A program made the position numbers and the translations under genes. From Macrostomum lignano (taxonomy: Eukaryota), in the NCBI GenBank assembly GCA_002269645.1, contig NIVC01000854.1, forward strand, positions 365,183 through 429,182: a DNA stretch of 64,000 bases. Direction: 5' to 3'. Within the stretch, counting starts at the first letter, position 1. Each line of letters opens with the position of its first letter. This document shows, piece after piece, positions 9,140 to 60,416 of the stretch. The notes under the pieces are model-generated. The model was not told the DNA's origin. It did no database searches and saw nothing but the letters and a program-made list of their open reading frames with translations.

Positions 9140-12100
9140 ATGACTTCTAAGATTTCTGCTCGATTCCTGCTTTGGTGGCTCGTGTGCTGCTGCTGCCACG
9201 GTCCGGTCTACCTTGGCTACCGGTGGGATTACGTCAAGATGCCGAACTTCAGGGGCACTGAGTACATCTTCCGCTACCCGATCGACGGCTCCAGCTTATA
9301 CACCGACCTGCGATATACGACTTTTGCCTCTGACTGTTTTAGCTTGACGGAGGAAGGTCACAAGATCTACGCGCCGCTCAACGACACCAGAGCGCTGGAC
9401 GCGTTTACCAAACTATTGGCTGAGAAGTAAGTGAGAGTTGTAAGCCACAGCTTTTTACCATAGACTAAGTCCAGACTAGACCACTCAGGTCGATGGGAAA
9501 CACGCAAATAATGGTGAAAAAAGTAACGATGCTCGTTTTAACTCATCGTCTATGGCCAAGCCTTATACTTCGTACAAACTCCATATAAGCTCGTACTAAA
9601 ACTTGCATTACGTGTCGCCCAGAGAATATCTAGATAAATCTATAATAATATCCATAATCTATCTTCCTATTATCAGTGAGTTTTCCTCACTGAAAGATGC
9701 TTGCAGTGCTAAAAGCCCTTTGATGAAGCAACCATAGATATTCTCTGGATATTCTCTGATGTCTTGATTTCTAAAATATTATTTAATCTCCTGTTACTGT
9801 ATTGACTTCTAGTGGTCCTTGGTCAATTCACACTTGCATTTGATGGTCGGAAAAATGGTTAACTGATTCAGTTCTTAATTATTTGTATAAGGCTTGGCCA
9901 TAGACAGTGCTTTTGAACGAGCCTCATACTTTTTTCACCAAGATTTTGCGAGCTTCCCCTCCTGAGTGATTAAAAAGTCGTTAAAACGCACCAAATGGTG
10001 TTACTTCAATTTGCGTCTATTGGGGTCTGACCGGAGAGCCAAAAATGGACGACAAAGACCAACAACCAACACAATAGTACTACGAGCTACAATATATAAC
10101 TATCAAAAACTTCAGTCAAGCTACTTCTCACAAAAAATATTAGTTGCCTCGGGAAAGCTTAGCAAAAGTGGTCGTTTTTAAATGCTGACAGTAGAAGTCC
10201 CCGTCGTATTCCTGAACGAAACCGACCGATCAATCCCTGTTAGTTTGGATTTTTTAGAAGACTTATTTAGAAGATTTTTTTTCAATTATTACACCAAATC
10301 AATATCTTTATATACTTTTAATTCATACGAAACTGCAACAGCGCCACAGTCAGAATAATTGTGGACGACGAAGAGCTGGCAACCAACTGGACCTACAAGC
10401 CCTATTACTATTATGGAGGAGACCCGGTGCCCCTGGCCTGGAACATGTTCGGACCGACTTTCACCCCGCCAGCTTGGCAGTGGGATAAAAAATCCGTTAC
10501 TAAAAAAATCAATCTGATCGCATTGAAGCGAACTCAGAATTCGTTTATGTACACGGCCGTGTCTACCGATGTGCACATGTACCCGATGTGCGAGTACTTT
10601 CCGCTGCGTGAGTAGCCGCTTATTCTCAAGTTGCTTAATTATTCAATGAGTAGAAAATAATTCCTAGAGCGCGAAAGCTACTGAAATGGTGTTGACAAAG
10701 CTACTGCAATGGGGATGACAGAGCTACTGAAATGGTGTTGACAGAGCTACTGCAATGGGGGTGACAAAGCTACTGCAATGGGGGTGACAAAGCTACTGCA
10801 ATGGGGATGACAGAGCTACTGCAATGAGGTTGACAAAGCTACTGCAATGGGGATGACAGAGCTACTGCAATGAGGTTGACAAAGCTACTGCAATGGGGGT
10901 GACAAAGCTACTGCAATGAGGTTGATAAAGCTACTGCAGTGGGGGTGACAAAGCTACTGCAATGGGGTGACAAAGCTACCGCAGTGGGGGTGACAAAGCT
11001 ACCGCAATGAGGGTGACAAAGCTACCGCAGTGGGGGTGACAAAGCTACCGCAGTGGGGGTGACAAAGCTACTGCAATGAGGGTGACAAAGCTACCGCAGT
11101 GGGGGTGACAAAGCTACCCCAGTGAGGGTGACAAAGCTACCCCAGTGAGGGTGACAAAGCTATCGTAGTGAGGGTGACAGAACTACTGCAAATGATCGAA
11201 TATGGTGATAGGGATGGAGGATAGAGAATGATATTAACAGACCAATCTCATTTAATGTAGGCGGCTGATACTTTTACCTGAAGTCAGTTTCCTATTTCTG
11301 CCACACTGTTCTGTTTAGCTACACAAGAGTTAAAATCTGATTATTCGAAAAATTTGCAGCCAACGGCTCAACTGGAAGCAGCACCTGCAGCCCGGTCACA
11401 TTGGTTGCCAGCATTGACGAAGGGCCGCTGGTGAATCAAAGCTATTGCGTTCATTTTCAAAAGCTGAAACTGGATGACGAGTACGAAAAAGACAAATATA
11501 ACTTGTTCTGCGAGAATCGGACTGGTCGGCCTGCTCAAGCTGAGAGTGCAGAGAAACGACAAAAGATGTGGTGTGTTTCTATTCATACCTTTGGATTCTT
11601 GGTGTACTTTTATCTTATTTTACCTCATCATTTTTATCACAAAAAACCTCACGCCAAACGACAGCTCTTTCTGTCGCTCAAATTCTCTTTTCTGACTTTT
11701 CTGTCTCTTCCATTTCTTATAACGTTTTGGTGGAAGTCTCGTCAAAAATCGAGTCAAAACATTCCACACAGGTGATTCCGATCAAACATTCAAATTCTAG
11801 GCCTCTGATTGAAACTGCTAACAATTTTAGCAAATCGATTTTAATTCATTTAGGGAGTTCCTGAACAACTCTATCCTGCAAAGCCAATCTGTGAACGAAG
11901 GAGACCACCTGATGTTGGCGCTAATGTTCGACACTGGCATGACCAACTGGAGGCATCAGTCCTTCTGCTTGCCGAGAATTCCGTGCCGGTCCAGTCTCAA
12001 CAAAGACATCCTTGATCACGATAAGGAGAAAGGACTGATAGTGATTTCAAAATGGGACAATGGTGATCCAAAAGAAATCAAGGACAAGGAATTTGACGAA

Positions 12101-15100
12101 CAAGTGGCTGTCCTATGTGCAGGTCGGAACCACTATTCTGGCTCTTAATAATCTAGTTTAATGCAGTATAATATTTTATGCCTGTCCTACATTACGCTAT
12201 TTTCTTGGGGGACAGCAAATAAAGCTTGACGTGCAATAGGCCTTTTCCGATATTGGGATTTTGGGATGTTACCCATGCTACATGTACACGTTATAATACA
12301 TTAATAAAATTCAAGTCTCTCATGATTAGTAATCAACAGAGTTGGTTGTTTACAAATCAAAGCATAATCCAAAAAAGTTATCTTAAGCCATAATTTCCAC
12401 TTCACTTCAGCCATGACCTGCCCCAGTCCGCACACTGACGACCAGCTGACGGAGAGGCATCTCGTCTGCGCCTCCTGGAACAGTTCGCTCTCCGCTGCGG
12501 AGCTGCAGCTGAAGAAGCTGCCGTTTCACCACATTGAATACACTTGCGCTCCCAACTTTGTGTTCGTCGGTGCCGAGCAAAATAGCAGCATTGTGAGGCG
12601 ATGCACTCAGGTAAAACAGACGGTGACGTTTACTACATTCAGGTAACAAGTTACATAAGTATTTCACGCGCCAATGCTGTACACAAGCGCTATATATCCT
12701 GTAACTTAATAGGAGAAAAGTGGAAAAAGATCAAAACTTGTGCATAGTCAAATGAGTTTCCATTATTATACTGAACATAAGGCTGAACTAATTTTGTTGC
12801 ATGTGATTCAACAGGATGCCGTTTGGGACAGCGAAATTCCGACCTGCGTCTCGCTGCCGTGCACCCAGATGCCCGTCTATCCGAATGACACAGCAACCAT
12901 CACCAGCTTCACAACGAAGGGCGTCACCTACAACTACACTGACAGCCAGCTGCTGCCGCACCTCTTGTCGAACGGAACATTCCGACCCGGAGACGAAATC
13001 CACATCTCCTGTGAATCCGGTCTCACAGGCTCCAGCCAGACCGCCTCCTGCATGCCTGGCGGCAGCTGGAGCCCCGTCACCATGGACTGCAGCCCCGGAT
13101 ACTGTGGCGGCATTTCCGTCCCTCCGACGGTGGCCAACTCGCAGACCAACGCCACCCTCGGAAACACCTCCTGGGAGGGCGCCAGCCTCGCCTTCACCTG
13201 CAACACAAACTACAGCGTCAGCGGCCTGCCCAACGGATCTGTCAGCTTCGTCATCAGCTGCATCAACAGCAGCTGGACCTCGTTCACCCACCTGAACTGC
13301 CGACCGACCGCCTGCTCGAGTCTGCCACCGGGACTGGGAAACTCCAGCCTGTACAGCTCGCTGAACCTCGAGCAGGAGCTGCAGACGGGTCTGCCGGCTT
13401 CCGGAGTGCAGGTCGACGACAGCCTCAGCTACGAGTGTCGGCCCGGCTTCGTTCGGACGACGCAGAACCGGCGATTGAGCATCTTCTGCAGGCTGGGAGA
13501 CCGCTGGGAGCCGGACGTTCCCGGTCCGTGCCAGCTGCTCAACTGCTCACAGCCGGATGCCATCGTGCTGCAGCCTCAGGCCGCTCGCATGACCGTCATC
13601 AATGCATCGTTCAACTTTGCTAACAGCTCGCACCTGCCCTACACAAGTTTGGTGCGGCTGAGCTGCGAAGAGCCGTACTTTGCCATGCCGGGCAGCAGCG
13701 AGCTGGCCGTGTGCGGACTGTCAGACGGAGATCCGCCTGCGGCAGTGTGGCGCAGCGTCGGCTCAAATGTGGCCTTCAGCTGCCGCAGTAAGCAACTTGT
13801 CATTATTGCTTCTAATCCGAAACTTGGAGTGGTGGCTTGCAAAAGAATGTACACCACTCTGGGCAATCTAGTTATAGATACCGGTATATAATTATTCAAT
13901 GTAGCGGCTCGCCTTAGGCTGTGCGAGCGAGTAAAGAAAGTCCGCTTGCCAGGCCTCAAGTTCGGCCTGGCTTCTTAACTTGAGCGTCTATTTGGGCCAT
14001 AGGTATAACAGTAAGGGAGGCATTTAGGCAAAGCTCTGCAGTCCGCATTATGTTAATAAGTTGGCGGCAGTGGACCGCCACATCAATGAACTACAATCTT
14101 TTTCAACAGAAAGCCATCTCCGAACCTCTTGTAGAGCACTGCAACAACAGTCTCTTGGCGCAGCTGGTCGGAGTCGGACTGGTCGACTTCCCCACCAGCT
14201 CCTACACGGATCCCGACCGAGTCGCCAACGTCACCTGCCTTTTGAGCGCCTTCGCTCCGCTGGCGGCGAACGTCAGTCTACAGAGCGACTCGCAGTTCTT
14301 CCTACAGGCTGTCTGCACGGCCGGAGACTGGACGGTGCTCAACCAGCTGCTGCTGCCGACATCGGAGACTCTGTGCCAGCCGAAGCCCTGTCTGTTGCCT
14401 ACCAACCTGACTCGATCTACAGCCGTTCCCAGCAACAACCTGGGAAACGTGACTACGGGAGACGGTCAGGTGTACCTGCCAGTGAACAGCACCGTGGAAG
14501 TGAGGTGCTGGCCCAACAGCCGCTTTGTGGACGCGTACGCGAGCTCTCGGACGGCTACTTGTGTTCTAGGTAAGTTCCCTGACTGATAATTCGCATTCAT
14601 TCTTAAGCTTCGAGTTGGGCATGTTGCTAATAATAGGTGTAGGATTTTTCGTTTAATTATGAGCTACTTTGTTTTATCAACGCGTACGTGTGCTCAGACG
14701 ATGAAGTTTGATGCTCTACTGCTAAAAGTCCTTCAAATTTTTATGGTTGTGAAGGCTCCTAGTTTATGACGAGAGTTGCAGGTATACAATATAACTACCC
14801 GCGATTTCCGTGTCTGGGTTATCCCAGTCTTGACAAACTGAAATTCGGCTACGTGAGCCAACACTTTCATTTTTAAATCCAGGCCCCCAGTGGAGCGCCG
14901 GCGGCTCTATGAACTGCCAGTTGGTCGTCTGTCCGGACAGCCACTTCGGTCCCGGGATCGATCCCAGCGTGCTGGCCGGCCCTCTAAACGCTTTCGCCCT
15001 GGCCGAGACGGCAACCGGGCCGTACCTCATCGGAGACCAGGTGGCCTTCGTGTGCCGGGAGAATGCGTCTTCTCCGGGCTCAGTGCTGCTCAACTGCACC

Positions 15101-15158
15101 GCTGGGCCGAACTTCACAGCCGTCTGGCAGTCGAATTCTACCCGACCGTATTGCACTG
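9140..15158 (+). CDS. Paralog A: secreted/cell-surface protein, signal peptide + 2 degenerate C-type-lectin-like domains + 8 sushi/CCP modules; 3' end not found
   Basis: Exons 9140-9426, 10342-10607, 11360-11570, 11854-12122, 12411-12610, 12815-13787, 14135-14569, 14883-15158. All introns are GT-AG and phase-consistent, giving 2917 nt of open frame. CCP pattern C..C..C.W..C occurs eight times. Same exon structure in paralogs B and C. Confidence 0.85.
9512..9940. mobile_element. MITE-like element in intron 1 of paralog A
   Basis: Terminal tggtgaaaaaagta / tacttttttcacca plus an inner perfect 21-bp inverted pair gtctatggccaagccttatac (9548-9568) / gtataaggcttggccatagac (9885-9905). No clear TSD. 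Confidence 0.65.
10674..11190. repeat. 23-bp minisatellite (GACAAAGCTACTGCAATGGGGGT-like), about 22 copies, intron 2 of paralog A
   Basis: Read directly from the sequence. Confidence 0.9.
13900..14082. mobile_element. 183-bp TG...CA insertion (solo LTR/TRIM-like) in intron 6 of paralog A
   Basis: Ends tgtagcgg...ccgccaca, flanked by a TCAA duplication (13896-13899, 14083-14086). The empty site attattcaatgaac is present in paralog B intron 6. Confidence 0.7.
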
Positions 15159-15834
15159 GTAAGTCTTTTCTTTTATGGAGGCCTGAATGAAATTTAGCGG
15201 CTTGGCACACTGCCAGATATGGTAAGTTTTCATTGGTAAGTTGGAACGAGTTGCCCTTTTTGCTAGAGATACGAGCTAGACGTTATTAGACTTAGGCTGA
15301 CATCACGGACATCTGTGCCTCTCTTGTGTATGACGGTATGACAGTACTTCTGACTATTTATTAAACAGACTTTAGTCCGCCGTTTTTAAAAGTAAGAAAA
15401 GATTTTATTTTAACTCTCTGTCTCTCAATATCGATTTAAATTTGCTGCGATAGTCTCGAACTGTGATTTTGTTCAGCAGATTTGTTTGACACTTTTTATT
15501 ACTGACCATTTCTTCCTGTTTCTTCAATTGCTAACTTAAGTATCAAATAAAAAACGTCACTTAAAAGTACATTCAAGCTACATACTTGAAGTATTTACGC
15601 TCGTGCGATACCAGCGTGTTTGCCTGCTCATGTTTCGAGTTGAAACTGTGTGCATAGTATGCATTCACGTGTGAAGACAGGAGTCTGGCAACTTCTCCTA
15701 ATTCCCCACGGTTCGCGAGCAAATCGATTCTTTGGCTGCATGCGCTCGAAAAGCGTGGAGTTCCGCTTCAGCAATGCTAGTAAGCAATTGACACCATCCG
15801 TCTCTTAGGTTCAGCTCATTCACGCCTCCGTTGC

Positions 15835-15873
15835 CTCACCTCACCTCACCTCACCTCACCTCACCTCACCTCA
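15835..15873. repeat. (CTCAC)n microsatellite between the 3' ends of paralogs A and B
   Basis: Read directly from the sequence. Confidence 0.85.
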
Positions 15874-16606
15874 ACTCATTCACCCCATCATTCACAGTCA
15901 CAGTCAGTCAGTCAGTGGGTTCACCCATGCAAAGTGATTAAGACTTTCTGCAAACAATATTTTAAACACTATGCAACCATTGCGCAACTATGCTACTAAT
16001 AAGTAGGTTGATTAAACAATTCTAGCAAAAACCATTGAAATAATGACAAAACCTGAATTGAGTGGAAAGTACAAAGAAATAAGTGGTTCTCTAAGAAATT
16101 TGTTTTATCAGATAAAAAAATTCATTTGAAATATTTCATAATTTACAGTGCGCTTGCCTTTCGAGTATTATTAGAAATTGAAAAAAGATAAATCACGTCT
16201 GATATTCAAACGAAACAAGGAACATTTCTAAGATAAAACAGACTCAACCAACTGTAACAAAAAATTGAAAATATCATAAATAAGCATCCTGGCTGCCTGC
16301 AGCATCGACGAAGCTATTCAAAGCATTTGCTGAATGGTACGAAGGGAGAGTTTGGTACTTACTCTGCTAAACTTACCCGATCCAAAACTCCAAAACTCCA
16401 CCTCGGAAAAAAAAAGTCACAGGTAAATCACTCAAGGACCAGTGGTGACAAAAGAGATCGTAGCCACTATGTAGAACCATTCATCTTTAAAAGTCGACGT
16501 TAGGAATAAAAAACCCTACCTCGCTACTGAAGAGCGATTCTTCAATTTTTTGAAGGCACCAGTGGCCTCGAAAAAATCCCCATTGAACTCATAGTAAAGT
16601 GCTCAC

Positions 16607-19600
16607 CTGCGCAGTAGGGCTGCTCAAAGTTTGGTCGCCAGACGGCTGTGAAATTCGGCCAAGCGGTGCAGTTGAGCAAAACTAAGCCAGGAGAAGAGGC
16701 GTTCTCCCGGCACGCGAAGGCCACCTGGTCTCCGATAAGGAACGGCCCTGTCGCAGTCTCTGCCGGAGAGGAGGCGTTCAGAGGACCAACCAGAACGCTG
16801 GATTCGATCCCGGGACCGAAGTCTCGGTCAGGACAGACGACCGACTGGCAGTTCATGGAGCCGCCGATGCTCCACTGAGGGCCTGGCAAGATTAAATGGT
16901 GGTATGCTGATGTCTGCACAGATCTCTAGCATTCTTTAGCATACTTTTCAGTTGAGCATCTAGTAATCTTTATAAAGCGCTGATCCAACCGGTAGGATTC
17001 TGGTGGTACAATCTATGTACGGATCTGCCAAAGCATAAACAAAATATAATTGAATGACAAATCCTTCTCTGGCTGACTGACTGACTGCCTAAGTTTTCGT
17101 TATTCTCCTAATGTGCACCTTGACTTAAACTGCAAGATCTACGAGTAACTAATTGATGTCGTGAAATGCTCAAGCCAGACCTATATCGCATGTCGCCGTC
17201 CGAGAGCTCGCGTACGCGTCTACAAACCGGCTGTTGGGCCAGCACCTCACTTCCATGGTGCTGTTCACTGGCAGGTACACCTGACCGTCTCCCGTAGTCA
17301 CGTTTCCCAGGTTGTTGCTGGGCACGGCTGTAGATCGAGTCAGGTTGGTAGGCAATAGACAGGGCTTCGGCTGGCACAGAGTCTCCGATGTCGGCAGCAG
17401 CAGCTGGTTGAGCACCGTCCAGTCACCGGCCGTGCAGACCACCTGTAGGAGGAACTGCGAGTCACTCTGTAGACTGACGTTCGCCGCCAGCGGAGCGAAG
17501 GCGTTCGAAAGGCAGGTGACGTTGGCGACTCGGTCGGGATCCGTGTAGGAGCTGGTGGCGAAGTCGACCAGTCCGAATCCCACCAGCTGCGCCAAGAGAC
17601 TGTTGTTGCAGTGCTCTGCAAGAGGTTCAGAGATGGCTTTTTATTGAAAAAGACTGTAGTTCATTGAATAATTATATACCGGTATCTAGAACGAGATTGC
17701 CAAGATTGGTGTATCTTCTTTTCCAAACGACCACTTCAAGTCACAAATTAGAAGCATCGTGAAAAGCTGCTTACTGCGGCAGCTGAAGGCCAAATTTGAG
17801 CCGACACTGCGCCACACTGCCGCAGGCGGATCTCCGTCTGACAGTCCGCACACGGCCAGCTCGCTGCTGCCCGGCATGGCAAAGTACGGCTCCTCGCAGC
17901 TCAGCCGCACCAAACTTGTGTAGGGCAAGTGCGAGCTGTTAGCAAAGTTGAACGATGCATTGATGACGGTCATGCGAGCGGCCTGAGGCTGCAGCACGAT
18001 GGCATCCGGCTGTGAGCAGTTGAGCAGCTCGCACGGACCGGGAACGTCCGGCTCCCAGCGGTCTCCCAGCCTGCAGAATATGCTCAACCGCCGGTTCTGC
18101 GTCGTCCGAACGAAGCCGGGCCGGCACTCGTAGCTGAGGCTGTCGTCGACCTGCACTCCAGAAGCCGGCAGACCCGTCTGCAGCTCCTGCTCGAGGTTCA
18201 GCGAGCTGTACAGGCTGGAGTTTCCCAGTCCCGGCGGCAGACTCGAGCAGGCGGTCGGTCGGCAGTTCAGGTGGGTGAACGAGGTCCAGCTGCTGTTGAT
18301 GCAGCTGATGACGAAGCTGACAGATCCGTTGGGCAGGCCGCCGACGCTGTAGTTTGTGTTGCAGGTGAAGGCAAGGCTGGCGCCCTCCCAGGAGGTGTTT
18401 CCGAGGGTGGCGTTGGCCTGCGAGTTGGCCACCGTCGGAGCGACGGAGATGCCGCCACAGTATCCGGGGCTGCAGTCCATGGTGATGGGGCTCCAGCTGC
18501 CGCCAGGCATACAGGAGGCGGTCTGGCTGGAGCCTCTGAGACCGGATTCACAGGAGATGCGAATTTCGTCCCCGGGTCGGAATGTTCCGTTCGACAAGAG
18601 GTGCATCAGCAGCTGGCTATCAGTGTAGTTGTAGGTGACGCCCTTTGTGGTGAAGCTGGTGATAGTTGCGGTGTCATTCGGGTAGACGGGCATCTGGGTG
18701 CACGGCAGCGAGACGCAGGTCGGGATTTCGCTGTCCCAAACGGCATCCTGTTGAATCACAGGCAACAAAATTAGCTCAGTCTAATGCTTGGTATAATAAT
18801 GGAAACTCATTTGACTATGCACAAGTTTTGATCTTTTTCCACTTTTCTCCCATTAAGTTTATCCTACGAGATATAGCGCTTGTGTACAGCATTGGCGCGT
18901 GAAATACTTATGTAGCATGTTACCTGAATGTAGTAAACGTCATTCAGCAGTTTTACCTGAGTGCATCGCCTCACAATGCTGTTATTTTGCTCGGCACCGA
19001 CGAACACAAAGTTGGGAGCGCAAGTGTATTCAATGTGGTGAAACGGCAGCTTCTTCAGCTGCAGCTCCGCAGCGGAGAGCGAGCTGTTCCAGGAGGCGCA
19101 GACGAGATGCCTCTCCGTCAGCTGGTCGTCAGTGTGCGGACTGGGGCAGGTCATGGCTGAAGTACAAAGTTGATTTAGCTAATCAACTTTACGCTCGTAG
19201 CTCAGCTGACAGACTTACAGACTAATGCAATACTCAGCTGTTATTGCATAAGTATGTAACAGTATATCAATATAAGCGTCAACTAACCTGTGCACAACGC
19301 GGCGCAATTATTGTTATATTCTAATATGCGAACTTCTCTCGGCCCATTGCCTTCCCAGCTGTAATACACAATGCCTCCTTTTGTTTTAGACTGTGAAAGA
19401 ATATCTCTGTTGATGCTTGACCGACACGGAGTCCCCGGCAAGCAGAAGGATTGATGCCTCCAGTTTGTCATTCCCGTGTCGAACATGAGAGCCAGCATCA
19501 GGTATTTTCCGTTTTGCACGTTTGATCCGGGTAGAATTGAGTCATTAAGAAATTTCCTAGACAAAATTTTAACTGCAATATTTTATGAGCTGGACGTTTG

Positions 19601-21356
19601 GGTAGACATCTGCTTCGTAGAAGTCATTCTTAAGTCATATTTTACGGATCGTATGTAACTGCGCGTACTACTTCATATGTTTGATTCGTTGCTAGGAATA
19701 CTAGAAATGTTTTGCTGTTTGAAAAAAACTTTCTCACCATAACTTGCTTCTCTTCTCACTGCTCTCCGCCTGAGCGGGCCGTCCATCGCCTTTCTCGCAG
19801 AACAGACGGTAGTTGTCGTACTTGTAGTCGTTATCAGGCTGCAACTGAGAGGAGTGAACGCAGTAGCTCTGATTTACCGATGGGCCCCCGTCCACTGTAG
19901 CAACCAGGCTCGCTTGGCTGCACGCAAAGCCGGCCATTGCCGAGGCGTTTGCTGTAAGGTAGGGAGGGGGACGGGGTGAGGAAATTACTTTGTACATGTA
20001 CATACATTTTGACACTCGACTGTACTGACACTAGACTGTACTGAAACTAAACTGAACTGACACTAGACTGTACTGAAACTAGACTGAACTGACACTAGAC
20101 TGTACTGAAACTAGACTGAACTGACACTAGACTGTACTGAAACTAGACTTGTACTGAAACTAGACTGAACTGACACTATACTGTACTGATACTCGACTGT
20201 ACTGACACTCGACTGTACTGACACTAGACTGTACTGAAACTAGACTGAACTGACACTAGACTGTACTGACACTCGACTGTACTGACACTAGGCTGGAATG
20301 ACACTATGCTGCAATGACACTAGGCTGGAATGACACTAGGCTGGAATGACACTAGACTGTACTGACACTCGACTGTACTGACACTAGACTGCACTGACAC
20401 TAGGCTGGAATGACACTAGGCTGCAATGACGCTAGGGGAAATGGGACGATTTTTATCCCCTCAATAAAGTGTGAATTCGCATTCTCGTAAAATATGTATA
20501 GACGCCACAATTTATAGTTTTTTATCTATCTTCTTTCGTAAAAGGCAATTCAAATAATCCGGATTACAAAAAATAAAAAAATTGTCGCGGCCTATGATGA
20601 CCCAATCGATACAGAATCCACTGATTAAGCAAAAAAAGAACTAAAAACTTACGCAGCGGAAAGTACTCGCACACTGGGTACATATCAGTGTTGACATCCA
20701 CAGCAACGTACTGAAACATATTCACGGTTCGCTTTAGCGCAATTAAGTTACACCTTTCGTCGACTGAACCGCTGTCCCACAGCGAAGCCGGCGGGGTAAA
20801 ACTCGGCCCAAACATGTTCCAGGCCAGGGGCACCGGGGCTCCTCCGGAATAGAAATAGGGCTGGTAGGTCCAGTTGGTGCAGAGCTGATTACCCTTTAGT
20901 ATGTTCATAAGCGTGGCGCTGAAATGAAAGGAAGATAAACAAATACATGCTTGTAAGCAGCTCGCTGTATTGACGTTATACTTGTTTTGCATCAGCAATG
21001 ATAACAAGGTGTTCTAGAGCTTTGAATGAATGAATTATCCTAAAAATCAGATCAGCCAAGTTGACTCACTTCTCTGCGAACAATTTGGTGAAGGCGTCCA
21101 CTGCTCTTGTGTCGTTGAGCGGGGCAAATATCGGATGCGTGTTTTCCGTCAGTGACAGACAGTCTGCTGCGAAGGTGGTGTATGACTCTGAGTCGTAGAA
21201 ACTGTTGTAGCTATTCAGCGGGTAACGGAAGATGTACTCGCTGCCTTTGTAGTTCGGCACCTTGACGTAGTCCCACCTGTAGCCGAAACAAAATGAGCCG
21301 AGGCAGCCGCTGAGAAGCCACCACAGCAGGTAGTTAAAGTACTGTGGCTGCATCAT
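16607..21356 (-). CDS. Paralog B (inverted): signal peptide + 2 degenerate C-type-lectin-like domains + 8 sushi/CCP modules; 3' end not found
   Basis: Exons (minus strand) 21356-21070, 20918-20653, 19951-19738, 19556-19288, 19156-18957, 18747-17775, 17615-17181, 16882-16607. GT-AG introns; lengths 287/266/214/269/200/973/435/276 match paralog A; no frameshift. Confidence 0.85.
20011..20433. repeat. 16-bp minisatellite (GACACTAGACTGTACT variants), intron 2 of paralog B
   Basis: Read directly from the sequence. Confidence 0.9.
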
Positions 21357-22961: not shown

Positions 22962-22981
22962 GAATCCCACCGCTGCCACCA
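22962..22981 (-). other. Retroelement primer-binding site complementary to the tRNA-Leu 3' end
   Basis: Plus strand gaatcccaccgctgccacca matches the 3' end of eukaryotic tRNA-Leu including the post-transcriptional CCA, and lies 1 nt from a TG..CA-type LTR end. Confidence 0.8.
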
Positions 22982-49700: not shown

Positions 49701-52700
49701 AGGAAAACTAAAAGACTTTTTAAAAAGAAGCGTCATGTAAAAATCATAGAAGCGTCATATAAAAAATCATAGTAGCGTCATATAAAAATCATAGATGCGT
49801 CATTTAAAAAATCATAGATGCGTCATTTAAACAATCATAGAAGCGTCATGTAAAATATCATAGAAGCGTCATGTAAACCATCATAGAAGCGTCATGTAAA
49901 AAATCATAGAAGCGTCATGTAAACAATCATAGAAGCGTCATGTAAACAATCATAGATGCGTCATTTAAAAAATCATAGATGCGTCATTTAAACAATCATA
50001 GAAGCGTCATGTAAAATATCATAGAAGCGTCATGTAAAAAATCATAGAAGCGTCATGTAAAAAATCATAGAAGCGTCATGTAAACAATCATAGAAGCGTC
50101 ATGTAAACAATCATAGAAGCGTCATGTAAAAAATCATAGAAGCGTCATGTAAAAAATCATAGAAGCGTCATGTAAACAATCATAGAAGCGTCATGTAAAC
50201 AATCATAGAAGCGTCATGTAAACAATCATAGAAGCGTCATGTAAAAAAATCATAGAAGCGTCATGTAAACAATCATAGAAGCGTCATGTAAACAATCATA
50301 GAAGCGTTATTTAAAAAATCATAGGAGCGTCATGTAAAAATCATAGAAGCGTCATGTAAACAATCATAGAAGCGTCATGTAAACAATCATAGAAGCGTCA
50401 TGTAAACAATCATAGAAGCGTCATGTAAAAAATCATAGAAGCGTCATGTAAACAATCATAGAAGCGTCATGTAAACAATCATAGAAGCGTCATGTAAACA
50501 ATCATGGAAGCGTCATGTAAACAATCATAGAAGCGTCATGTAAAAAATCATAGAAGCGTCATGTAAAAAATCATAGAAGCGTCATGTAAAAAATCATAGA
50601 AGCGTTATGTAAACAATCATAGAAGCGTCATGTAAACAATCATAGAAGCGTCATGTAAACAATCATAGAAGCGTCATGTAAACAATCATAGAAGCGTCAT
50701 GTAAACAATGATAGAAGCGTCATGAAAAAATCATAGAAGCCTCATTTAAAAACTAATGAAAGTGTCATTTAAAAAATTAAGAAGCATCATGGTACAATAA
50801 AAGAAGCGTCATGTCAGACATGAAGGGTGTCATGTAAAAATTAAATGCAGCTATAATGCTGTGCTGGGGAGAAAAACTGAGACGTAAAGGCTCTCAGAGA
50901 ATAACTGAGATTACGGGGGGGGGGTTCTGAGATGTCAAAGCAAAAGTCAGAAGCTACTTCAAAGTTCATGTACTTTACTAAATTTTTTTATTGCATTCTT
51001 TGTTGGCTCGCCACGGGGGGGGGCGCTGATAGAAGAAAAGTCATGTAAAAAATAAAAGTAGCACTATGTATACATAAAAGAAAAGTCATGTCGAAGTTAA
51101 AAGATTCATTTGGGAATTGCTACGATGTCAAAGCTTGGAGGGAATCGTTATAGTGCTGTGATTCTTAAAGAAGGAATCACTAAAATGTCAAGGCTTAGGG
51201 GAGAAGAATTGCTGAGATTTCAAGGCTTTAGGTTGGGTTAAAGTTAGGTTTAGGTCAGGTGTGGGTTGAGGGTTATATTTTTATCGGGTTTCAAGGTTAA
51301 CAGAATAACAGGGGATTTTTTAGATTTCAAGGTTTATGGGGGCCATCGCTGACATGTCAAGGCTTACAGGGGGAATAGCTGAGATGTCAAGGCTCACGGG
51401 GTATAAATGAGATTTCAAGGCTAAAGTCAGAAGCTACATGTAGTTTATTGAAAACTTTTTATTACATTATTTGATGCCTCCTCAGGGGAGGGATCGCTGA
51501 TAAAAAAAGCGTAATGTAAAAAATAAAAGAAGCTTCATGTCGAAGTTAAGAGATTCATTTGGGAATCCCTACGATGTCGAGGCTTGCAGGGAATCGCTAT
51601 AATGCTGTAGTGCTATAATGACTCTTAGAGAGAATTACTGAAATTTCAATGCTTTAGGGTTAGGTTAGGGTTAGGGTTAGGGTTAGGGTTAGGGTTAGGG
51701 TAGGCTAGGGTTAGGGTTAGAAGGTTGACAGATATTTTTAGATTTCCAAGGCTTATTGGGGGCATTGCTGAGATGTCAAGGGGGGAAGTTGATATGTTAA
51801 AGCTTGTGGGGGGGAATTACTGACATGTCAAGGCTTACAAGGTTTGACAGGAGATTTTTTAAGATTTCAAGGATATATGTAGCTTATTAAAAAAATGTGT
51901 ATTGCATTTTTTGGCTCCCCAACGGGGGGCGTAGATTGCTAGTATAAACTGTGACAAAAAACTGAAAAGTATTTGGCACCTAGACCACCGCTTGAGACCT
52001 TGGATCTATTCCTGATTTCACAGGCAACGTGAAGCTTTTTAATTGAAGGTTAGAACCAGAGTGTTTACATAACTTCTCATCGCCAAACACAAACAGATAC
52101 CAATGGAGCCTTCAGCACAAGAACTCACCCTCGAGCGGGCCCTTCGCGACGCATTCGCCAAAGTGGCTGGTGCCGACCTGGAGGTTGATGCTTATGAGCT
52201 GCGCGATATTCTCAACATTGCCTTCATGAAAGGTTAGTGGACTGGATGTCGATAGACGCATTACTCTAAAAGAAACAAAAATCATTAAGTTTTTGTTATG
52301 ATTAAACCAGAGTTCAAATTCGACGGCTTCTGCCTCGAGACCTGCCGCTCGATGGTGGCTATGATGGACGCCGACCAGTCAGGGAAGCTGGGCTTCCAGG
52401 AGTTCAAGACGCTATGGAGCAGCCTGCGACTGTGGAAGACTGCTTTCAAAAAGTTTGACGAGGACAAGTCTGGTAATTTCAACAGCTACGAGTTGCGGCA
52501 GGCCTTGAAAACAGTCGGTGAGTGCTCACAGCAACTTCGCTTTAGTAATTTTTTTATGGAAGTTTGTCCCATAAAATATTTTCCCGCATTTTATCCACAC
52601 AAAATTATAATTATCGGCACGGGACCGTGGGGATAAGCACTTCTATTTTTTTATAGTGACATAATTGAGGAAACTATCTCAATCTGCACTCCAAGGCTAC

Positions 52701-52980: not shown

Positions 52981-53124
52981 TCAAAGCTCGATGATATCCA
53001 TTGAATCTGAAGCTTCAATCAACTTCGAGATGCACATAATTATTTTCTTCGCCACCTTTTTATTGCCAATTGACAAATTTGACATAGACAGCTGGTCTAG
53101 CTTATGTATCTATTAAAACATTTT

Positions 53125-53130
53125 AATAAA
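53125..53130 (+). terminator. Candidate polyadenylation signal of the calpain gene
   Basis: AATAAA 145 nt after the stop codon; position only, no transcript support. Confidence 0.4.
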
Positions 53131-55634: not shown

Positions 55635-58600
55635 ATGATGTCAAGTGCTGTTATTTATTACCTACTGTGGTGGCTGGCTCACTACTGTGGTTCCCAAGTC
55701 TGCCTTGGCTACCGGTGGGACTACGTCAAAATCCCCGACTTCAAAGGCACAGAGTACATCTTCCGCTACCCGATTTCCGATGCCGACCCGCCGACGTTCA
55801 ACAGGTCCCTGCCGTACGCTACTTTCGCCTCCGACTGCTTGGCCCTGAAGGAGAACAACCACAGCATATTCGCTCCTCTCAACGACACTCGAGCCGTCGA
55901 CGCATTCAACAGTCTGATTACCGAAAAGTGAGCCTTTGCTGATTAAATTCTTGCAAAACCTTTCAACAGTTACATCTTCTGAACTATGAGTCCAAATGAA
56001 AGAGTGCTCGCTTAAACATTCCGCAACAAAAATTTCAGCGTTACACTCAGTCTCATCGTAGACGGCAAAGACCTGTGCACTAATTGGACCTATCAGCCTT
56101 ATTTTTACACAGGAGGAGACCCGGTGCCCCTTGCCTGGAACATGTTCGGTCCATCCTTCACCCCGCCAGCTGGGCAGTGGGACAATTCCTCTGTCGACGC
56201 GAAGTTTAACCTGATAGCCTTAAACCGATTCGAGAATAAGTTTCTGTACACAGCTGTGGACACAAGCGTCGAGTTGTATCCAGTCTGCGAGTATTTCCCT
56301 CAGCGTGAGTCGCATTCTGTTAAAAAATTCAATACTTGACACCTTCTAGCACTTTTATATAAGCAAGCTACTATCTTCAGGTAATGGCTCTGCAGAACCT
56401 TACATTGCCTGCAGTCCAGCAAGCCTGGTTGCTAGCTTGGACGGAGGACCGCTGGTGAATCAGAGCTTCTGCGTCCACTCCACCAAGCTAAAGTTTAAAG
56501 ACGAGTACCTGCAAGATGCCTACGAGCTGTTCTGCGAAGCCGGCAATGGCCGTCCGCGCAAGCGGAGAGCTTAGAGAAACGAGATAAATTATGGTTTGTT
56601 TACACTGTTAGAGAAAGTTTAGGAAGTTTTTGGAAAATTTTCCCCATTCTTTGTGATATCTAAGCTCGACTGTTGAATCTTTGTGCGTAGTCTTGAAATG
56701 TATATAAATCCTTATGCGAGCTAGCATAGCATACGGTAGTATAGTCTAATATAGTACCATATGATAGTATCTCTGCATCCTTGCAAAGACACAAGACCAG
56801 ACCCAAAGACTTGAGATCTTTACAAAGACCCCAAAACCAGCCCTCGATAATCCATCAACTTACTGCTAGCTAAAACTAGCTAAAACGCCTCATTGTGACT
56901 CCTCACCGTGTACCCATTGCATTCGGGATTAGGAAATTTCTGAATGATTCAATCATTCCGGGAACCTATGTGTTAAACGGAGGCCACCTGATGCTTGCGC
57001 TCATGTTCGACACCGGCATGACCAACTGGAGACGTCAGTCCTTCTGCCTTCCCGGGATCCCCTGCCGGTCTAGTCTCAGCAAAGAGATCCTTAGCCAAGA
57101 CAAGAGCAAGGGACTTGTCGTGAGATACATCTGGAAAGACTCGTTGCCCAAGGCGGTTAAGAGAAGCAATTACCACTCCAACGAGGGTGTACTCTGTACA
57201 GGTAAGCATCTTTGATTGGAAGCACTTCTCTGTAAAGAAATTTTCACATCTTTTTCCAAAGCCATCTTTCTATTGCTGGAAGGTTTACATATAGTGAGCG
57301 TTACAACGAATAACAAAAACAAACGCTAGTAAAATACATTCAAAGTGCCTCGCCCACGGGAAGAGAAGAGAGAAGTGAGGAGATAGAACAGCTACGCCAA
57401 CCTTGAGCGGGCGGGATTGCCATTGTGAAGTTATAAGGACCCGAGGGCCGGATTAGAGAGGCCTCGTGGGCTGGAGTTTGCCGACCCCTGCTTTATAACT
57501 TTGAAAGGCATTTGCATTATGAACTTCATCATAAATATTCCTTTTGTTGCCCCTCCCAACGTCACCAGTGTAAAACCAATTTCCAAGGAACGTTGTTCGA
57601 ACTGCATAGTTACGTGCCGATACGCTTACTGGGAGCATTAGGATGGACAACGTCTTCTGATACTTAATCTACTGACCCCTTGCTACGTGTAATCCAAAAT
57701 ATACTAACATCCCCAAAGTAGGAAACAAAAATGTCACTCCAGCTTATTTTGGGTCATCTGAGTTCTGAAGCATTATCCAATCGGTTCAGATCCTCAAAAA
57801 CTACCATGAGCAAGGGGAGACGAATTTATTGTTTCCAATAAAAATGTACTTTATGGGTATTTATTCTGAAATAGACAAACTTACTCTAGAGCTTTAAATT
57901 AAACTTATGAGCAAGTTAACTTACAATTAATTTCCACTTCAGCCATGACCTGCCCCAGTCCGCACACTGACAATCAGCTGACGGAGAGGCATCTCGTCTG
58001 CGCCTCCTGGAACAGTTCGCTCTCCGCTGCGGAGCTGCAGCTGAAGAAGCTGCCGTTTCACCAGATTGAATACACTTGCGCTCCGAACTTTGTGTTCGCT
58101 GGTTCTGAAAAAAACGGCAGCAGCATTGTGAGGCGATGCACCCAGGTACAGGTTCAGCTCGATTAAGCTGAGAATAACTCTAATTCACGTATGTTAAATT
58201 AATGACAAACAACCCTAAATGTTTAAAACAGACATAATGGAATCTCCTTAAATTAACTTTGCAAAAATCTTTGAAATTTTTCTTACATCCATATTCGTAA
58301 TTATTGATATATCAAAATAGTAACTCAAGTGACTCAATAATTCCGCCGCTCAGGACGCCGTGTGGGATATTGAAATGCCCCAATGCGTCTCGCTGCCGTG
58401 CACCCAGATGCCCGTCTACCCGAATGACACCGCAACTATCACCAGCTTCACCACAAAGGGCGTCACATACAACTACACTGACAGCCAGCTGCTGACGCAC
58501 CTCTTATCGAACGGAACATTCCGACCCGGGGACGAAATCCACATCTCCTGTGAATCCGGTCTCACAGGCTCCAGCCAGACCGCCTCCTGCATGCCTGGCG

Positions 58601-60416
58601 GCAGCTGGAGCCCCGTCACCATGGACTGCAGCCCCGGATACTGCGGCGGCGTCTCCGTCCCTCCGACCGTGGCCAACGCGCAGGCCAACGCCACCCTCGG
58701 AAACACCTCCTGGGAGGGCGCCAGCCTCGCCTTCACCTGCAACACAAACTACAGCGTCGGCGGTCTGCCCAACGGATCTGTCAGCTTCGTCATCAGCTGC
58801 ATCAACAGCAGCTGGACCTCGTTCACCCACCTGAACTGCCGACCGACCGCCTGCTCGAGTCTGCCGCCGGGACTGGGAAACTCCAGCCTGTACAGCTCGC
58901 TGAACCTCGAGCAGGAGCTGCAGACGGGTCTGCCGGCTTCCGGAGTGCAGGTCGACGACAGCCTCAGCTACGAGTGCCGGCCCGGCTTCGTTCGGACGAC
59001 GCAGAACCGGCGGTTGAGCATCTTCTGCAGGCTGGGAGACCGCTGGGAGCCGGACGTTCCCGGTCCGTGCGAGCTGCTCAACTGCTCACAGCCGGATGCC
59101 GTCGTGCTGCAGCCTCAGGCCGCTCGCATGACCGTCATCAATGCATCGTTCAACTTTGCTAACAGCTCGCACCTGCCCTACACAAGTTTGGTGCGGCTGA
59201 GCTGCGAGGAGCCGTACTTTGCCATGCCGGGCAGCAGCGAGCTGGCCGTGTGCGGACTGTCAGACGGAGATCCGCCTGCGGCAGTGTGGCGCAGCGTCGG
59301 CTCAAATGTGGCCTTCAGCTGCCGCAGTAAGCAGCTTGTCATCATTGCTTCTAATCCGAAACTTGGAGTGGTGGCTTGCAAAAGAATGCACACCAATCTG
59401 GGAAACCTCGTTCTAGATACCGGTATACAATTTTTTTATTGAACTGCCGTCTTTTTCAATAGCAAGCCATCTTCTAATCTTTTTTAGAGCACTGCAACAA
59501 CAGTCTCTTAGCGCAGCTGGTGGGATTCGGACTGGTCGACTTCGCCACCAGCTCCTACACGGATCCCGACCGAGTGGCCAACGTCACCTGCCTTTCGAGC
59601 GCATTCGCTCCGCTGGCGGCGAACTTCAGTCTACAGAGCGACTCGCAGTTCCTCCTACAGGCGGTCTGCACCGCCGGTGACTGGACGGTGCTCAACCAGC
59701 TGCTGCTGCCGACATCGGAGACTCTGTGCCAGCCCAAGCCCTGTCTGTTGCCTACCAACCTGACTCGATCTACAGCCGTGCCAGCAACAACTTGGGAAAC
59801 GTGACTACGGGAGACGGTCAGGTGTACCTGCCAGTGAACAGCACCGTGGAAGTGAGGTGCTGGCCCAACAGCCGGTTTGTAGATGCGTACGCGAGCTCAC
59901 GGATGGCGGCATGCGAAAAAGGTTTTTAAAATCATAAATCGTATATGTTTACAGGAAGATTATATATAAAATTATGTTTACCACTGAAATTCCCTCAGGC
60001 TTTTCCTGGATAAAAAAGACCTCAAACTTTGTTTATAAAAACATTTTGCATAGAAATTGTTTGTTTACAGCGAGATGACTGCGTAACATAGTGACAGTCT
60101 GAAGTGCAGCTATGGGAGCCACCAATTTAATTTTTTCAATCCAGGCCCTCAGTGGACTGCCGGCGCATCCATGGACTGCCAGCCGGTCACCTGTTCAGAA
60201 GACCACTTCGGTCCCGGAATCGATCCCAGCGTGCTGGCCGGTCCTCTGAACGCCTCCACATTGGCAGTGGCTGCAGCCGGTCCGTTTCTCGTCGGAGACC
60301 AGGTGGCCTTCGTGTGCCGGGAGAATGTGTCTTCTGGCTCAGTTTTTTCAGCTGTCTGTCTGAACAGAACTTCACAGCGGCTTGGCGACCGGACAAAGCG
60401 CAGCCCTACTGTCCAG
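55635..60416 (+). pseudogene. Paralog C of the lectin-like/CCP gene, with three 1-nt deletions (pseudogene or assembly error)
   Basis: Exons 55635-55927, 56039-56304, 56381-56593, 56933-57201, 57943-58145, 58354-59326, 59488-59921, 60145-60416. Exons 3, 7 and 8 are each 1 nt short of phase (213, 434, 272 nt); premature TAG at 56572-56574. Gene identity is secure; pseudogene status is not. Confidence 0.6.

What the first reader, a model, noticed from the sequence alone, without database searches (positions are those of the whole stretch)
9140..60416. Three-member lectin-like/CCP family with diversified heads on a homogenised stalk
Seen: paralogs A, B and C share an 8-exon structure. Exons 1-4 (two lectin-like domains) are only roughly two-thirds identical by eye. 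The 324-aa exon 6 (CCP stalk) differs at just 9 residues between A and B and carries 12 N-glycosylation sequons. Known: CTLD followed by CCP repeats is the selectin-type architecture, and variable ligand-binding heads on conserved stalks typify invertebrate recognition families such as FREPs. Inference: a locally expanding recognition or adhesion family (immunity, allorecognition or gamete/mucus interaction) with diversifying heads and concerted evolution of stalks. I do not recognise this 2xCTLD-8xCCP architecture as a named family.
Basis: partly seen in the sequence, partly recalled or inferred. Interest (0 to 1): 0.82.

Follow-up and report, generated by a model that had tools for sequence, protein, structure and literature searches.

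The report
Flatworm sushi-stalk gene family, orphan heads
Three neighbouring flatworm (Macrostomum lignano) genes encode probably secreted proteins with an old, diverged N-terminal head of unknown fold on a stalk of eight sushi modules that gene conversion keeps almost identical; this is an ordinary way for a gene family to evolve, but the head has no detectable relatives outside this genus.

Summary
There are three paralogs with the same 8 exons: A on the + strand at 9140-15158, B on the - strand at 21356-16607, and C on the + strand at 55635-60416. Exons 1-4 are 63-70% identical at the DNA level and exons 5-7 are 93-99% identical. Exon 6 encodes 324 aa, with 9 A/B differences and 12 sequons.

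- As assembled, C carries 1-nt frameshifts in exons 3, 7 and 8.
- All three copies end exon 8 on a conserved phase-1 GT donor, and I could find no exon 9 or membrane anchor.

The stalk is eight sushi (CCP) modules, shown by the Pfam Sushi model and the Cys/Trp pattern.

Concerted evolution of the stalk is supported. Synonymous divergence (dS) is about 0.1 in exons 5-7 against about 1.7 (saturated) in the heads. Introns 5 and 6 are homogenised too, and the shared variants are mosaic.

"Diversifying heads" is not supported. Head dN/dS is about 0.17, the same as the stalk, and no window exceeds 0.6.

"Lectin-like" is not supported by any test I could run:
- Pfam gives no hit even at E<=10.
- A sequence search of solved structures finds nothing.
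- Profile-profile comparison with C-type lectin domains is no better than shuffled controls.
- Two AlphaFold runs failed (pLDDT about 35).

A HMMER search of 1.84 billion representative proteins found head relatives only in Macrostomum lignano. This is a lineage-restricted sushi-stalk family with an orphan head, and is of moderate interest.

The parts
9140..9426 (+). Gene A exon 1: ATG, hydrophobic N-terminus (putative signal peptide), start of head half 1
   Evidence: the junction with exon 2 is reproduced by P0004
10342..10607 (+). Gene A exon 2: rest of head half 1
11360..11570 (+). Gene A exon 3: head half 2, first part
   Evidence: junctions reproduced by P0003
11854..12122 (+). Gene A exon 4: head half 2, second part
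   Evidence: the exon 4/5 junction is reproduced by P0005
12411..12610 (+). Gene A exon 5: CCP1 up to its third Cys; the homogenised block starts a few bases upstream, at about 12404
12815..13787 (+). Gene A exon 6: end of CCP1 plus CCP2-CCP5, 324 codons, 12 sequons
14135..14569 (+). Gene A exon 7: CCP6 and most of CCP7; the homogenised block ends at about 14571
14883..15158 (+). Gene A exon 8: end of CCP7 plus CCP8; ends in phase 1 on GTAAGT, with no stop codon
21070..21356 (-). Gene B exon 1
20653..20918 (-). Gene B exon 2
19738..19951 (-). Gene B exon 3
19288..19556 (-). Gene B exon 4
18957..19156 (-). Gene B exon 5 (99% identical to A exon 5)
17775..18747 (-). Gene B exon 6
17181..17615 (-). 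Gene B exon 7
16607..16882 (-). Gene B exon 8; ends in phase 1 on GTGAGC; only 1448 bp separate it from the end of A exon 8 (convergent genes)
55635..55927 (+). Copy C exon 1
56039..56304 (+). Copy C exon 2
56381..56593 (+). Copy C exon 3, with a 1-nt deletion after 56549 relative to A and B; read as assembled it gives a stop at codon 251
56933..57201 (+). Copy C exon 4
57943..58145 (+). Copy C exon 5 (in-frame 3-nt insertion)
58354..59326 (+). Copy C exon 6, intact 973-nt open frame, 96.6-96.7% identical to A and B
59488..59921 (+). Copy C exon 7, with a 1-nt deletion after 59780 (CCC to CC)
60145..60416 (+). Copy C exon 8, with a 3-nt deletion and a 1-nt deletion after 60346 (in a T run)
12532..12844 (.). 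Tract where A and B share every variant against C (end of exon 5, intron 5, start of exon 6); intron 5 is 91% identical between A and B but cannot be aligned with C
13799..13849 (.). Tract in intron 6 where A and C share 12 consecutive variants against B
12404..19163 (.). Inverted repeat formed by the stalks of A (12404-14571) and B (19163-17179): arms of about 2.1 kb, 95% identical, about 2.6 kb apart

Best explanation
The window is from Macrostomum lignano or a very close relative. It holds three members of a family restricted to that lineage.

What the proteins look like:
- Each is a modular and probably secreted glycoprotein. The 972 aa modelled carry about 30 N-glycosylation sequons.
- The N-terminus is hydrophobic and looks like a signal peptide.
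- A head of about 320 aa follows, in two parts of about 160 aa, one with 2 and one with 6 conserved Cys. Its fold is unknown.
- The head is followed by a rod of eight CCP (sushi) modules joined by 3-4 residue linkers.

How the family evolved:
- The paralogs are old. Synonymous sites in exons 1-4 are saturated, and introns 1-4 can no longer be aligned.
- The DNA from just upstream of exon 5 to the end of exon 7 (CCP1-CCP7) has been repeatedly overwritten between copies by non-allelic gene conversion. The inverted A/B stalk arms are an obvious substrate.
- As a result, exons and the introns between them differ by only 3-9% in that block.
- Exon 8 (CCP8) was homogenised longer ago or less often (dS about 0.5-0.65).
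- Heads and stalks are both under ordinary purifying selection, with dN/dS about 0.17-0.2.
- Copy C is a recent pseudogene, or else it carries assembly indel errors.

Inferred function: these are extracellular binding proteins. A paralog-specific head would supply specificity, and a common glycosylated CCP rod would act as spacer or as a shared docking surface.

Shown: gene structure, domain content of the stalk, the dS contrast, intron homogenisation, mosaic tracts, and the taxonomic restriction of the head. Inferred: secretion, the binding role, and which copies are expressed.
For: Gene models and junctions:
- Searches give the models. Independent predictions P0001 and P0003-P0005 reproduce six of the seven junctions.

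Organism:
- The only hits are M. lignano UniRef entries. P0002 is 96% identical to B in exon 8.

Stalk:
- Pfam Sushi gives E=1e-22, with 4-6 stretches.
- There are 8 modules with C1-C4 and a Trp.
- The nearest solved chains are Crry, CR1 and beta2-glycoprotein I.

Concerted evolution:
- By the Nei-Gojobori method, stalk dS is 0.087-0.129 and head dS is 1.62-1.80.
- Intron 5 is 91% identical between A and B, and intron 6 is 80-86% identical in all pairs. Introns 1-4 and 7 are at the identity of unrelated sequence.
- Runs of AB-, AC- and BC-shared variants cluster more than chance. The permutation P is 0.002 for the number of runs and 0.001 for the longest run.
- Stalks of further family members (P0001, P0002) are also 91-99% identical to A, B and C, while P0001's exon 8 is only 61-72% identical.

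Selection:
- dN/dS is 0.16-0.18 in the head and 0.17-0.23 in the stalk. No head window exceeds 0.6.

Head restriction:
- A profile HMMER search of 1.84e9 representative proteins returned only Macrostomum fragments and one spurious repeat protein.

Membrane anchor:
- No 19-residue stretch has mean Kyte-Doolittle hydropathy above 1.7, and the highest-scoring stretches lie inside CCP modules or at the N-terminus.
- No candidate terminal exon is conserved between copies.
Against: - The 3' end is undefined. All three copies keep a consensus donor after exon 8, so one or more exons, possibly a membrane anchor, may exist that I could not find.
- The signal peptide is judged only from hydrophobicity.
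- No expression data were available, so none of the copies is shown to be transcribed.
- With saturated dS in the heads, episodic or site-specific positive selection cannot be excluded.
- Within exon 6 after 12845 plus exon 7, the three sharing patterns are about equal and not significantly clustered. The mosaic signal therefore rests mainly on two tracts.
- Polishing of a long-read assembly with multi-mapping reads could in principle exaggerate paralog identity. Against this, the older-assembly proteins P0001 and P0002 show the same pattern.
Confidence: 0.6

Rival explanations
1. One reading: these are selectin-type recognition or adhesion proteins. Two C-type lectin-like domains would bind glycans, would be diversified by positive selection, and would sit on a conserved CCP stalk.
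For: - By eye, both head halves carry strings reminiscent of the first half of a C-type lectin domain (for example FASDC...IYAPLNDTRALDAF and LFCE..GRPAQAES.EKR..W.FL, then TNW). This is my own inspection.
- hhalign aligned head half 2 to my C-type lectin profile in that same register.
- The CCP stalk is real.
Against: - There is no Lectin_C hit even at E<=10, and no solved C-type lectin domain at E<=10.
- hhalign probability is 0.2% for half 1 and 2.4% for half 2.
- Column-shuffled controls reach the observed score in 96 of 200 trials (half 1) and 13 of 200 trials (half 2).
- There is no WIGL or WND and no EPN/QPD at a lectin position (B has one QPD at 222), and the spacing of the Cys pair in half 2 (293 and 299) does not fit the C2-C3 pair of a C-type lectin domain.
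- There is no EGF domain and no transmembrane segment.
- Head dN/dS is 0.17, and no window is above 0.6.
- Both AlphaFold runs were uninformative, so the fold itself remains untested.
Confidence: 0.15
2. The stalk identity reflects very strong purifying selection on an essential stalk, or one recent duplication, rather than ongoing gene conversion.
For: Stalk dN/dS of 0.17-0.23 shows the protein is constrained. In the core of exon 6 and in exon 7 the three copies are about equidistant, as a single event would give.
Against: - Selection on the protein cannot hold synonymous sites at dS about 0.1 and introns 5 and 6 at 80-91% identity while the same genes' exons 1-4 are saturated and introns 1-4 are unalignable.
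- A single whole-gene duplication cannot give an 18-fold difference in dS within one gene.
- Different segments group A with B, A with C, or B with C.
- C's intron 5 is unrelated to that of A and B, although the flanking exons are 93-97% identical.
Confidence: 0.07
3. These are flatworm counterparts of the complement-regulator (RCA) proteins, and the CCP array is the functional part.
For: The nearest solved chains are Crry, CR1 and beta2-glycoprotein I. Tandem CCP genes with segmental gene conversion are typical of the human CFH/CFHR cluster (PMC9923232, PMC1828695).
Against: - The similarity is only at the level of the generic Sushi module (E=1e-8 for one module).
- No non-Macrostomum protein matched the full query at E<=1e-3.
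- RCA proteins have no such head.
- Nothing in the window links the genes to complement.
Confidence: 0.08
4. The cluster is decaying and these copies have no current function.
For: Copy C has three frameshifts and a stop at codon 251 as assembled. No gene model has a defined 3' end.
Against: - A and B keep 972-973 codons open across 8 exons with intact splice sites.
- dN/dS of about 0.17-0.2 in both head and stalk shows constraint.
- All three of C's indels lie next to short homopolymers or dinucleotide runs and could be long-read assembly errors. That reading is my inference.
Confidence: 0.1

Closest known systems
Human CFH / CFHR1-5 cluster (regulators of complement activation)
   Same: Tandem genes made of CCP modules. 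Some modules are nearly identical between paralogs because of segmental duplication, non-allelic recombination and gene conversion, while other parts are diverged (PMC9923232, PMC1828695). The nearest solved chains to the stalk are RCA-type CCPs.
   Different: The proteins here carry a 320-aa non-CCP head with no known relatives. Their CCP modules are long (66-80 residues from C1 to C4). No complement link is shown. Similarity is only at the level of the generic module.
Selectins (CTLD-EGF-CCPn-TM)
   Same: An N-terminal globular head followed by a row of CCP modules, heavily N-glycosylated and extracellular.
   Different: The head is not detectably a C-type lectin domain. There is no EGF domain, no transmembrane segment and no cytoplasmic tail, and the head has two parts.
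Arm-to-arm gene conversion in inverted repeats or palindromes (for example the human Y-chromosome palindromes; from my own knowledge)
   Same: The stalks of A and B form inverted arms of about 2.1 kb at 95% identity, 2.6 kb apart. The identity includes intron sequence.
   Different: Only part of each gene is homogenised. A third, directly oriented copy about 40 kb from B takes part as well, and so do copies elsewhere in the genome (P0001).
Invertebrate variable recognition families (FREPs, Ciona vCRL1, Botryllus fester; from my own knowledge)
   Same: A multi-copy, lineage-specific family of extracellular proteins. Some of those families contain CCP modules.
   Different: There is no fibrinogen or Ig domain. 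No evidence of diversifying selection, somatic diversification or alternative splicing was obtained here.

Membership tests
CCP / Sushi / SCR (Pfam PF00084) | Match to the family HMM above the curated cut-off | tested here: met
   80.4 bits against a cut-off of 20.7, E=1.3e-22, with 4 stretches (6 at E<=10)
CCP / Sushi / SCR (Pfam PF00084) | Modules with four Cys and a Trp between C3 and C4, joined by short linkers | tested here: met
   8 modules, C1-C4 spans of 66-80 residues, a Trp in every module, and C4-to-C1 steps of 4-5 positions
CCP / Sushi / SCR (Pfam PF00084) | C1-C3 and C2-C4 disulfides and the beta-sandwich fold | not tested
C-type lectin-like domain (Pfam PF00059) | Match to the family HMM, or to a solved C-type lectin domain by sequence | tested here: not met
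   No Lectin_C hit at E<=10 for A, B, P0003, P0004 or either head half. No C-type lectin domain among PDB hits at E<=10
C-type lectin-like domain (Pfam PF00059) | Profile-profile similarity to C-type lectin domains | tested here: not met
   hhalign probability 0.2% (half 1) and 2.4% (half 2). Shuffled controls reach the score in 96 of 200 and 13 of 200 trials.
C-type lectin-like domain (Pfam PF00059) | The C-type lectin fold (two helices, two sheets, long loop region) | tested here: inconclusive
   AlphaFold2 mean pLDDT was 35.6 (whole head) and 33.6 (half 2) with only 4-5 diverged sequences. No fold search was run on these models
C-type lectin-like domain (Pfam PF00059) | Ca2+/sugar motifs EPN or QPD plus WND, and the WIGL motif | tested here: not met
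   None is present in the heads of A or C. B has one QPD at residue 222, which is not at a lectin position
Selectins | CTLD + EGF + CCP repeats + transmembrane segment + cytoplasmic tail | tested here: not met
   There is no EGF or Lectin_C in Pfam. No hydrophobic segment of transmembrane grade was found in the 972 aa, and no candidate downstream exon is shared between copies
GON domain (Pfam PF08685; the name UniRef gives P0003) | Match to the family HMM | tested here: not met
   No Pfam family at E<=10 for P0003 or P0004. The PROSITE profile that probably produced the name could not be run
Multigene family under concerted evolution by non-allelic gene conversion (a process, not a protein family) | Synonymous and intronic divergence far lower in one segment than in the rest of the same genes | tested here: met
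   dS about 0.1 against about 1.7; introns 5 and 6 are 80-91% identical while the other introns cannot be aligned
Multigene family under concerted evolution by non-allelic gene conversion (a process, not a protein family) | Mosaic of tracts that support different pairings of the copies | tested here: met
   An AB tract at 12532-12844, an AC tract at 13799-13849, and short BC and AC runs. Permutation P is 0.001-0.002. The pattern is not significant inside exon 6 after 12845 plus exon 7 taken alone
Families under diversifying selection (as in FREP-like recognition genes) | dN/dS above 1 overall or locally in the variable part | tested here: not met
   Head dN/dS is 0.16-0.18. The highest pN/pS in a 30-codon window is 0.60. 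dS is saturated and there are only three sequences, so site-level tests were not possible

The most novel reading that the evidence does not exclude
The 320-aa head would be a new extracellular binding module invented in macrostomid flatworms, with a new fold or one diverged beyond recognition. The family would be a recognition system, for example in mating or sperm-recipient interactions or in defence in this hermaphrodite. Each paralog's head would bind a different ligand, and gene conversion would keep the CCP stalks interchangeable because they dock to one common partner.
Probability: 0.2. Interest if true: 0.65.

Novelty: new variant of a known kind. Interest (0 to 1): 0.4.

Why it matters
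- It is a clean, small example of gene conversion confined to part of a gene. The 5' limit sits just upstream of exon 5 and the 3' limit at the end of exon 7, in a convergent gene pair plus a distant copy. It can be used to measure tract lengths and rates of conversion in a flatworm genome.
- The head domain has no detectable relative among 1.84 billion representative proteins, yet it is conserved under purifying selection in at least four diverged paralog types. It is therefore a real, functional, lineage-specific domain worth a structure.
- M. lignano is a tractable model with RNAi, in situ hybridisation and transgenesis, so the function can be tested directly.
- The result also corrects the record: the attractive 'selectin-like lectins under diversifying selection' story is not backed by the data.

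Tried and rejected
1. Spliced head proteins could not be submitted to the structure and representative-search tools. I worked around this with P0003 plus exon-exact window fragments (alignments A4 and A8).
2. AlphaFold2 on the whole head (pLDDT 35.6) and on half 2 alone (33.6) gave unusable models, so I ran no Foldseek search.
3. The first fragment alignments were wrong and were discarded: exon 4 was misaligned in A2 and the end of exon 1 in A3.
4. Internal duplication of the head (half 1 against half 2) gave hhalign probability 1.2% and is not supported.
5. I looked for an exon 9 or a membrane anchor in three ways:
   - tblastx and blastn between the downstream regions found nothing.
   - A scan for phase-1 acceptors followed by hydrophobic open frames gave one unconvincing candidate at 15541 in A only.
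   - Smith-Waterman alignment of all downstream open frames between copies gave no score above chance.
6. Exact look-ups of P0001 and P0003 in the assembly collection found no contigs, so no extra genomic copies could be compared.
7. GC-biased conversion: stalk GC3 is 0.72-0.82 against 0.51-0.74 in the head, but exon 1 is as high as the stalk and the converted introns are AT-rich. The signal is too weak to use.
8. Literature searches for Macrostomum with 'sushi' or with 'gene conversion' found nothing on this family.
9. I left the third word-indexed protein search unused. The exhaustive HMMER search had already shown no outside relatives, so the expected gain did not justify the cost.

Full report
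**What is there**

A self-comparison of the window shows three related loci:
- A at about 9.1-15.2 kb on the + strand;
- B at about 21.4-16.6 kb on the - strand;
- C at about 55.6-60.4 kb on the + strand.

I derived exon models from three-way alignments of every conserved block and assembled them. Each copy has eight exons with AG/GT borders and the same phases.

My outer coordinates are 9140 for the ATG of A and 60416 for the end of C exon 8. These are exactly those of the finding.

Independent gene predictions from Macrostomum lignano in UniRef reproduce the junctions 1/2, 2/3, 3/4, 4/5, 6/7 and 7/8 (P0001, P0003, P0004, P0005). Only junction 5/6 rests on my model alone. It restores a normal CCP module, with C3 in exon 5 and the Trp and C4 in exon 6.

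A tblastn search with protein A finds no further copies or fragments in the window.

**Organism**

The only database relatives are M. lignano proteins. P0002 is 96% identical to B in the fast-evolving exon 8. The window is therefore M. lignano or something extremely close to it.

These are all correct.
- DNA identity is 63-70% in exons 1-4, 93-99% in exon 5, 96.6-96.9% in exon 6, 93.5-95.9% in exon 7 and 76-82% in exon 8.
- Exon 6 is 324 codons with 9 amino-acid differences between A and B. It has 12 sequons in each copy.

First, C is not intact as assembled. Relative to A and B it lacks one base in each of three exons:
- after 56549 in exon 3;
- after 59780 in exon 7;
- after 60346 in exon 8.

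Read literally, it stops at codon 251. All three sites lie beside short runs of identical bases. C is either a young pseudogene or a victim of long-read indel errors, and I cannot tell which.

Second, no copy has a stop codon in the model. Exon 8 ends in phase 1 on a good donor in all three (GTAAGT, GTGAGC, GTAAAT) although the surrounding DNA has diverged.

I found no ninth exon:
- tblastx and blastn between the downstream regions gave nothing.
- A scan for phase-1 acceptors followed by hydrophobic open frames gave nothing.
- All-against-all alignment of downstream open frames gave nothing above chance.

A and B are convergent, and only 1448 bp separate their eighth exons. Read-through would add 10-21 residues and no anchor.

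**The stalk**

- Pfam finds Sushi only (80 bits).
- By the Cys/Trp pattern there are eight modules. Each has four Cys, a Trp between C3 and C4, 66-80 residues from C1 to C4, and 3-4 residue linkers. There are 1-5 sequons per module.
- The nearest solved chains are Crry, CR1 and beta2-glycoprotein I, at the level of the generic module.
- No stretch of transmembrane grade exists in the 972 residues.

**The head**

- There is no Pfam family at E<=10 for A, B, the two halves, P0003 or P0004.
- Nothing relevant comes up among PDB sequences at E<=10.
- A profile of the head was searched with HMMER against 1.84 billion representative proteins. It found only three Macrostomum fragments and one spurious repeat protein.
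- Profile-profile comparison with 14 C-type lectin domains gave 0.2% probability for half 1 and 2.4% for half 2.
- Column-shuffled versions of the head profiles reach the observed score in 96 of 200 and 13 of 200 trials.
- The alignment of half 2 does fall in the register I would have chosen by eye (LFCE..GRPAQAES.EKR against C..GG.LASI.S.EE). It remains a lead and nothing more.
- The lectin motifs EPN/QPD, WND and WIGL are absent, apart from one QPD in B at residue 222 that is not at a lectin position.
- The Cys pair at 293 and 299 does not fit the C2-C3 pair of a C-type lectin domain.
- The two halves are not detectably related to each other.
- Two AlphaFold2 runs were the only ones the tool would accept (P0003 with window fragments). 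They gave pLDDT 35.6 and 33.6. I did not run fold searches on such models.
- UniRef calls P0003 a 'GON domain-containing protein' and P0004 a 'Conjugal transfer protein'. Pfam's GON model does not match, and I treat both names as unreliable.

**Evolution**

Nei-Gojobori estimates:
- Head: dS 1.62-1.80 (saturated), dN 0.29-0.31, omega 0.16-0.18.
- Exons 5-7: dS 0.087-0.129, dN 0.017-0.023, omega 0.17-0.23.
- Exon 8: dS 0.46-0.67.

The roughly 18-fold drop in dS inside one gene is not due to protein constraint, because introns share it. Intron 5 is 91% identical between A and B, and intron 6 is 80-86% identical in all pairs. Introns 1-4 and 7 align no better than unrelated DNA.

The block starts a few bases before exon 5 and ends at the exon 7 donor.

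Variant sharing is mosaic:
- A=B against C over 12532-12844. There C's intron 5 is unrelated to that of A and B, although the flanking exons are 93-97% identical.
- Five consecutive B=C sites at 12880-12916.
- Five consecutive A=C sites at 13000-13076.
- Twelve consecutive A=C sites in intron 6.

Permutation gives P=0.002 for the number of runs and P=0.001 for the longest run. Inside exon 6 after 12845 plus exon 7 the three patterns are about equal and not clustered. This fits either many short events or a near-simultaneous homogenisation.

Other family members behave the same way. P0001 is 91-95% identical to A, B and C in the stalk but only 61-72% identical in exon 8. The P0003/P0004 head is 61-67% identical to all three.

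The stalks of A and B form inverted arms of about 2.1 kb at 95% identity, 2.6 kb apart. This is a natural substrate for conversion.

GC3 is somewhat higher in the stalk (0.72-0.82 against 0.51-0.74), but exon 1 is as high and the converted introns are AT-rich. I draw nothing from it.

**Selection on the heads**

There is no sign of diversifying selection.
- Pairwise omega equals that of the stalk.
- In sliding 30-codon windows, pN/pS ranges from 0.13 to 0.60.
- Long invariant blocks (GYRWDYVK, PVPLAWNMFGP, LMLALMFDTGMTNWR and others) alternate with variable stretches.

This is what an old family under purifying selection looks like. Saturated dS and only three sequences mean that site-level positive selection cannot be excluded.

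**Interpretation**

The best-supported account is a Macrostomum-restricted family of probably secreted, heavily glycosylated proteins.
- Each has a conserved but orphan two-part head on a rod of eight CCP modules.
- The paralogs are old.
- CCP1-CCP7, with the introns between them, are kept alike by non-allelic gene conversion.
- A and B look functional; the status of C is uncertain.

That the proteins bind extracellular ligands through the head is an inference from the architecture. Tissue and role are unknown.

The closest known parallel for the evolutionary behaviour is the human CFH/CFHR cluster of CCP genes (PMC9923232, PMC1828695). The selectin comparison fails on the lectin domain, the EGF domain and the anchor.

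**Verdict**

The lectin label and the diversifying-selection story are not supported. The family is a new variant of a familiar kind, and its interest lies mainly in the orphan head and in the sharply bounded conversion block.

Noticed in passing
window 29752-52633 (+): A calpain gene lies between B and C. Exons match Peptidase_C2 (29752-30102 and 38491-38967), Calpain_III (43008-43879) and EF-hands (52289-52633). Its introns hold several kilobase-sized minisatellite arrays.
   Followed up: partly
window 546-1775 (+): A single-exon 409-aa open frame upstream of A matches the rhodopsin-family 7TM receptor model (7tm_1, E=6e-9).
   Followed up: partly
window 30400-33959; 35249-38316; 44579-46239; 46634-47659; 49726-50814: Large tandem arrays. 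One of 3.6 kb has 64/80/112-bp periods built from a roughly 16-bp unit and a strong C-over-G skew. One of 3.1 kb has a 21-bp unit. One of 1.7 kb has a 48-bp unit. Two separate arrays share the same 23-bp unit (AGAAGCGTCATGTAAACAATCAT). These arrays produce the long spurious ORFs seen.
   Followed up: no
window 10674-11191 and 20010-20435: Intron 2 of A holds a 23-bp x 22.6 tandem array, and intron 2 of B holds an unrelated 16-bp x 26.6 array. The same intron of two paralogs has independently acquired a minisatellite.
   Followed up: no
window about 13895-14082: Intron 6 of A carries an insertion of about 188 bp that is absent from B and C, inside the otherwise homogenised block. It may be a small mobile element, or it may mark the edge of a conversion tract.
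   Followed up: no
window 15159-15164, 16601-16606 (-), 60417-60422: All three copies keep a consensus splice donor directly after exon 8 (GTAAGT, GTGAGC, GTAAAT) although no downstream exon is detectable. Poly(A) signals (ATTAAA at 15360, AATAAA at 15546) were found only downstream of A.
   Followed up: partly
P0003, P0004 (M. lignano UniRef entries): The database names for two head-only predictions of this family ('GON domain-containing protein' and 'Conjugal transfer protein') are mutually inconsistent. The Pfam models do not back either name.
   Followed up: partly
window 61850-62760: A 14-bp tandem repeat (CTCGGCGGGCAATT x 15, at 62519-62729) creates long open frames on both strands downstream of C. 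It is probably non-coding.
   Followed up: no
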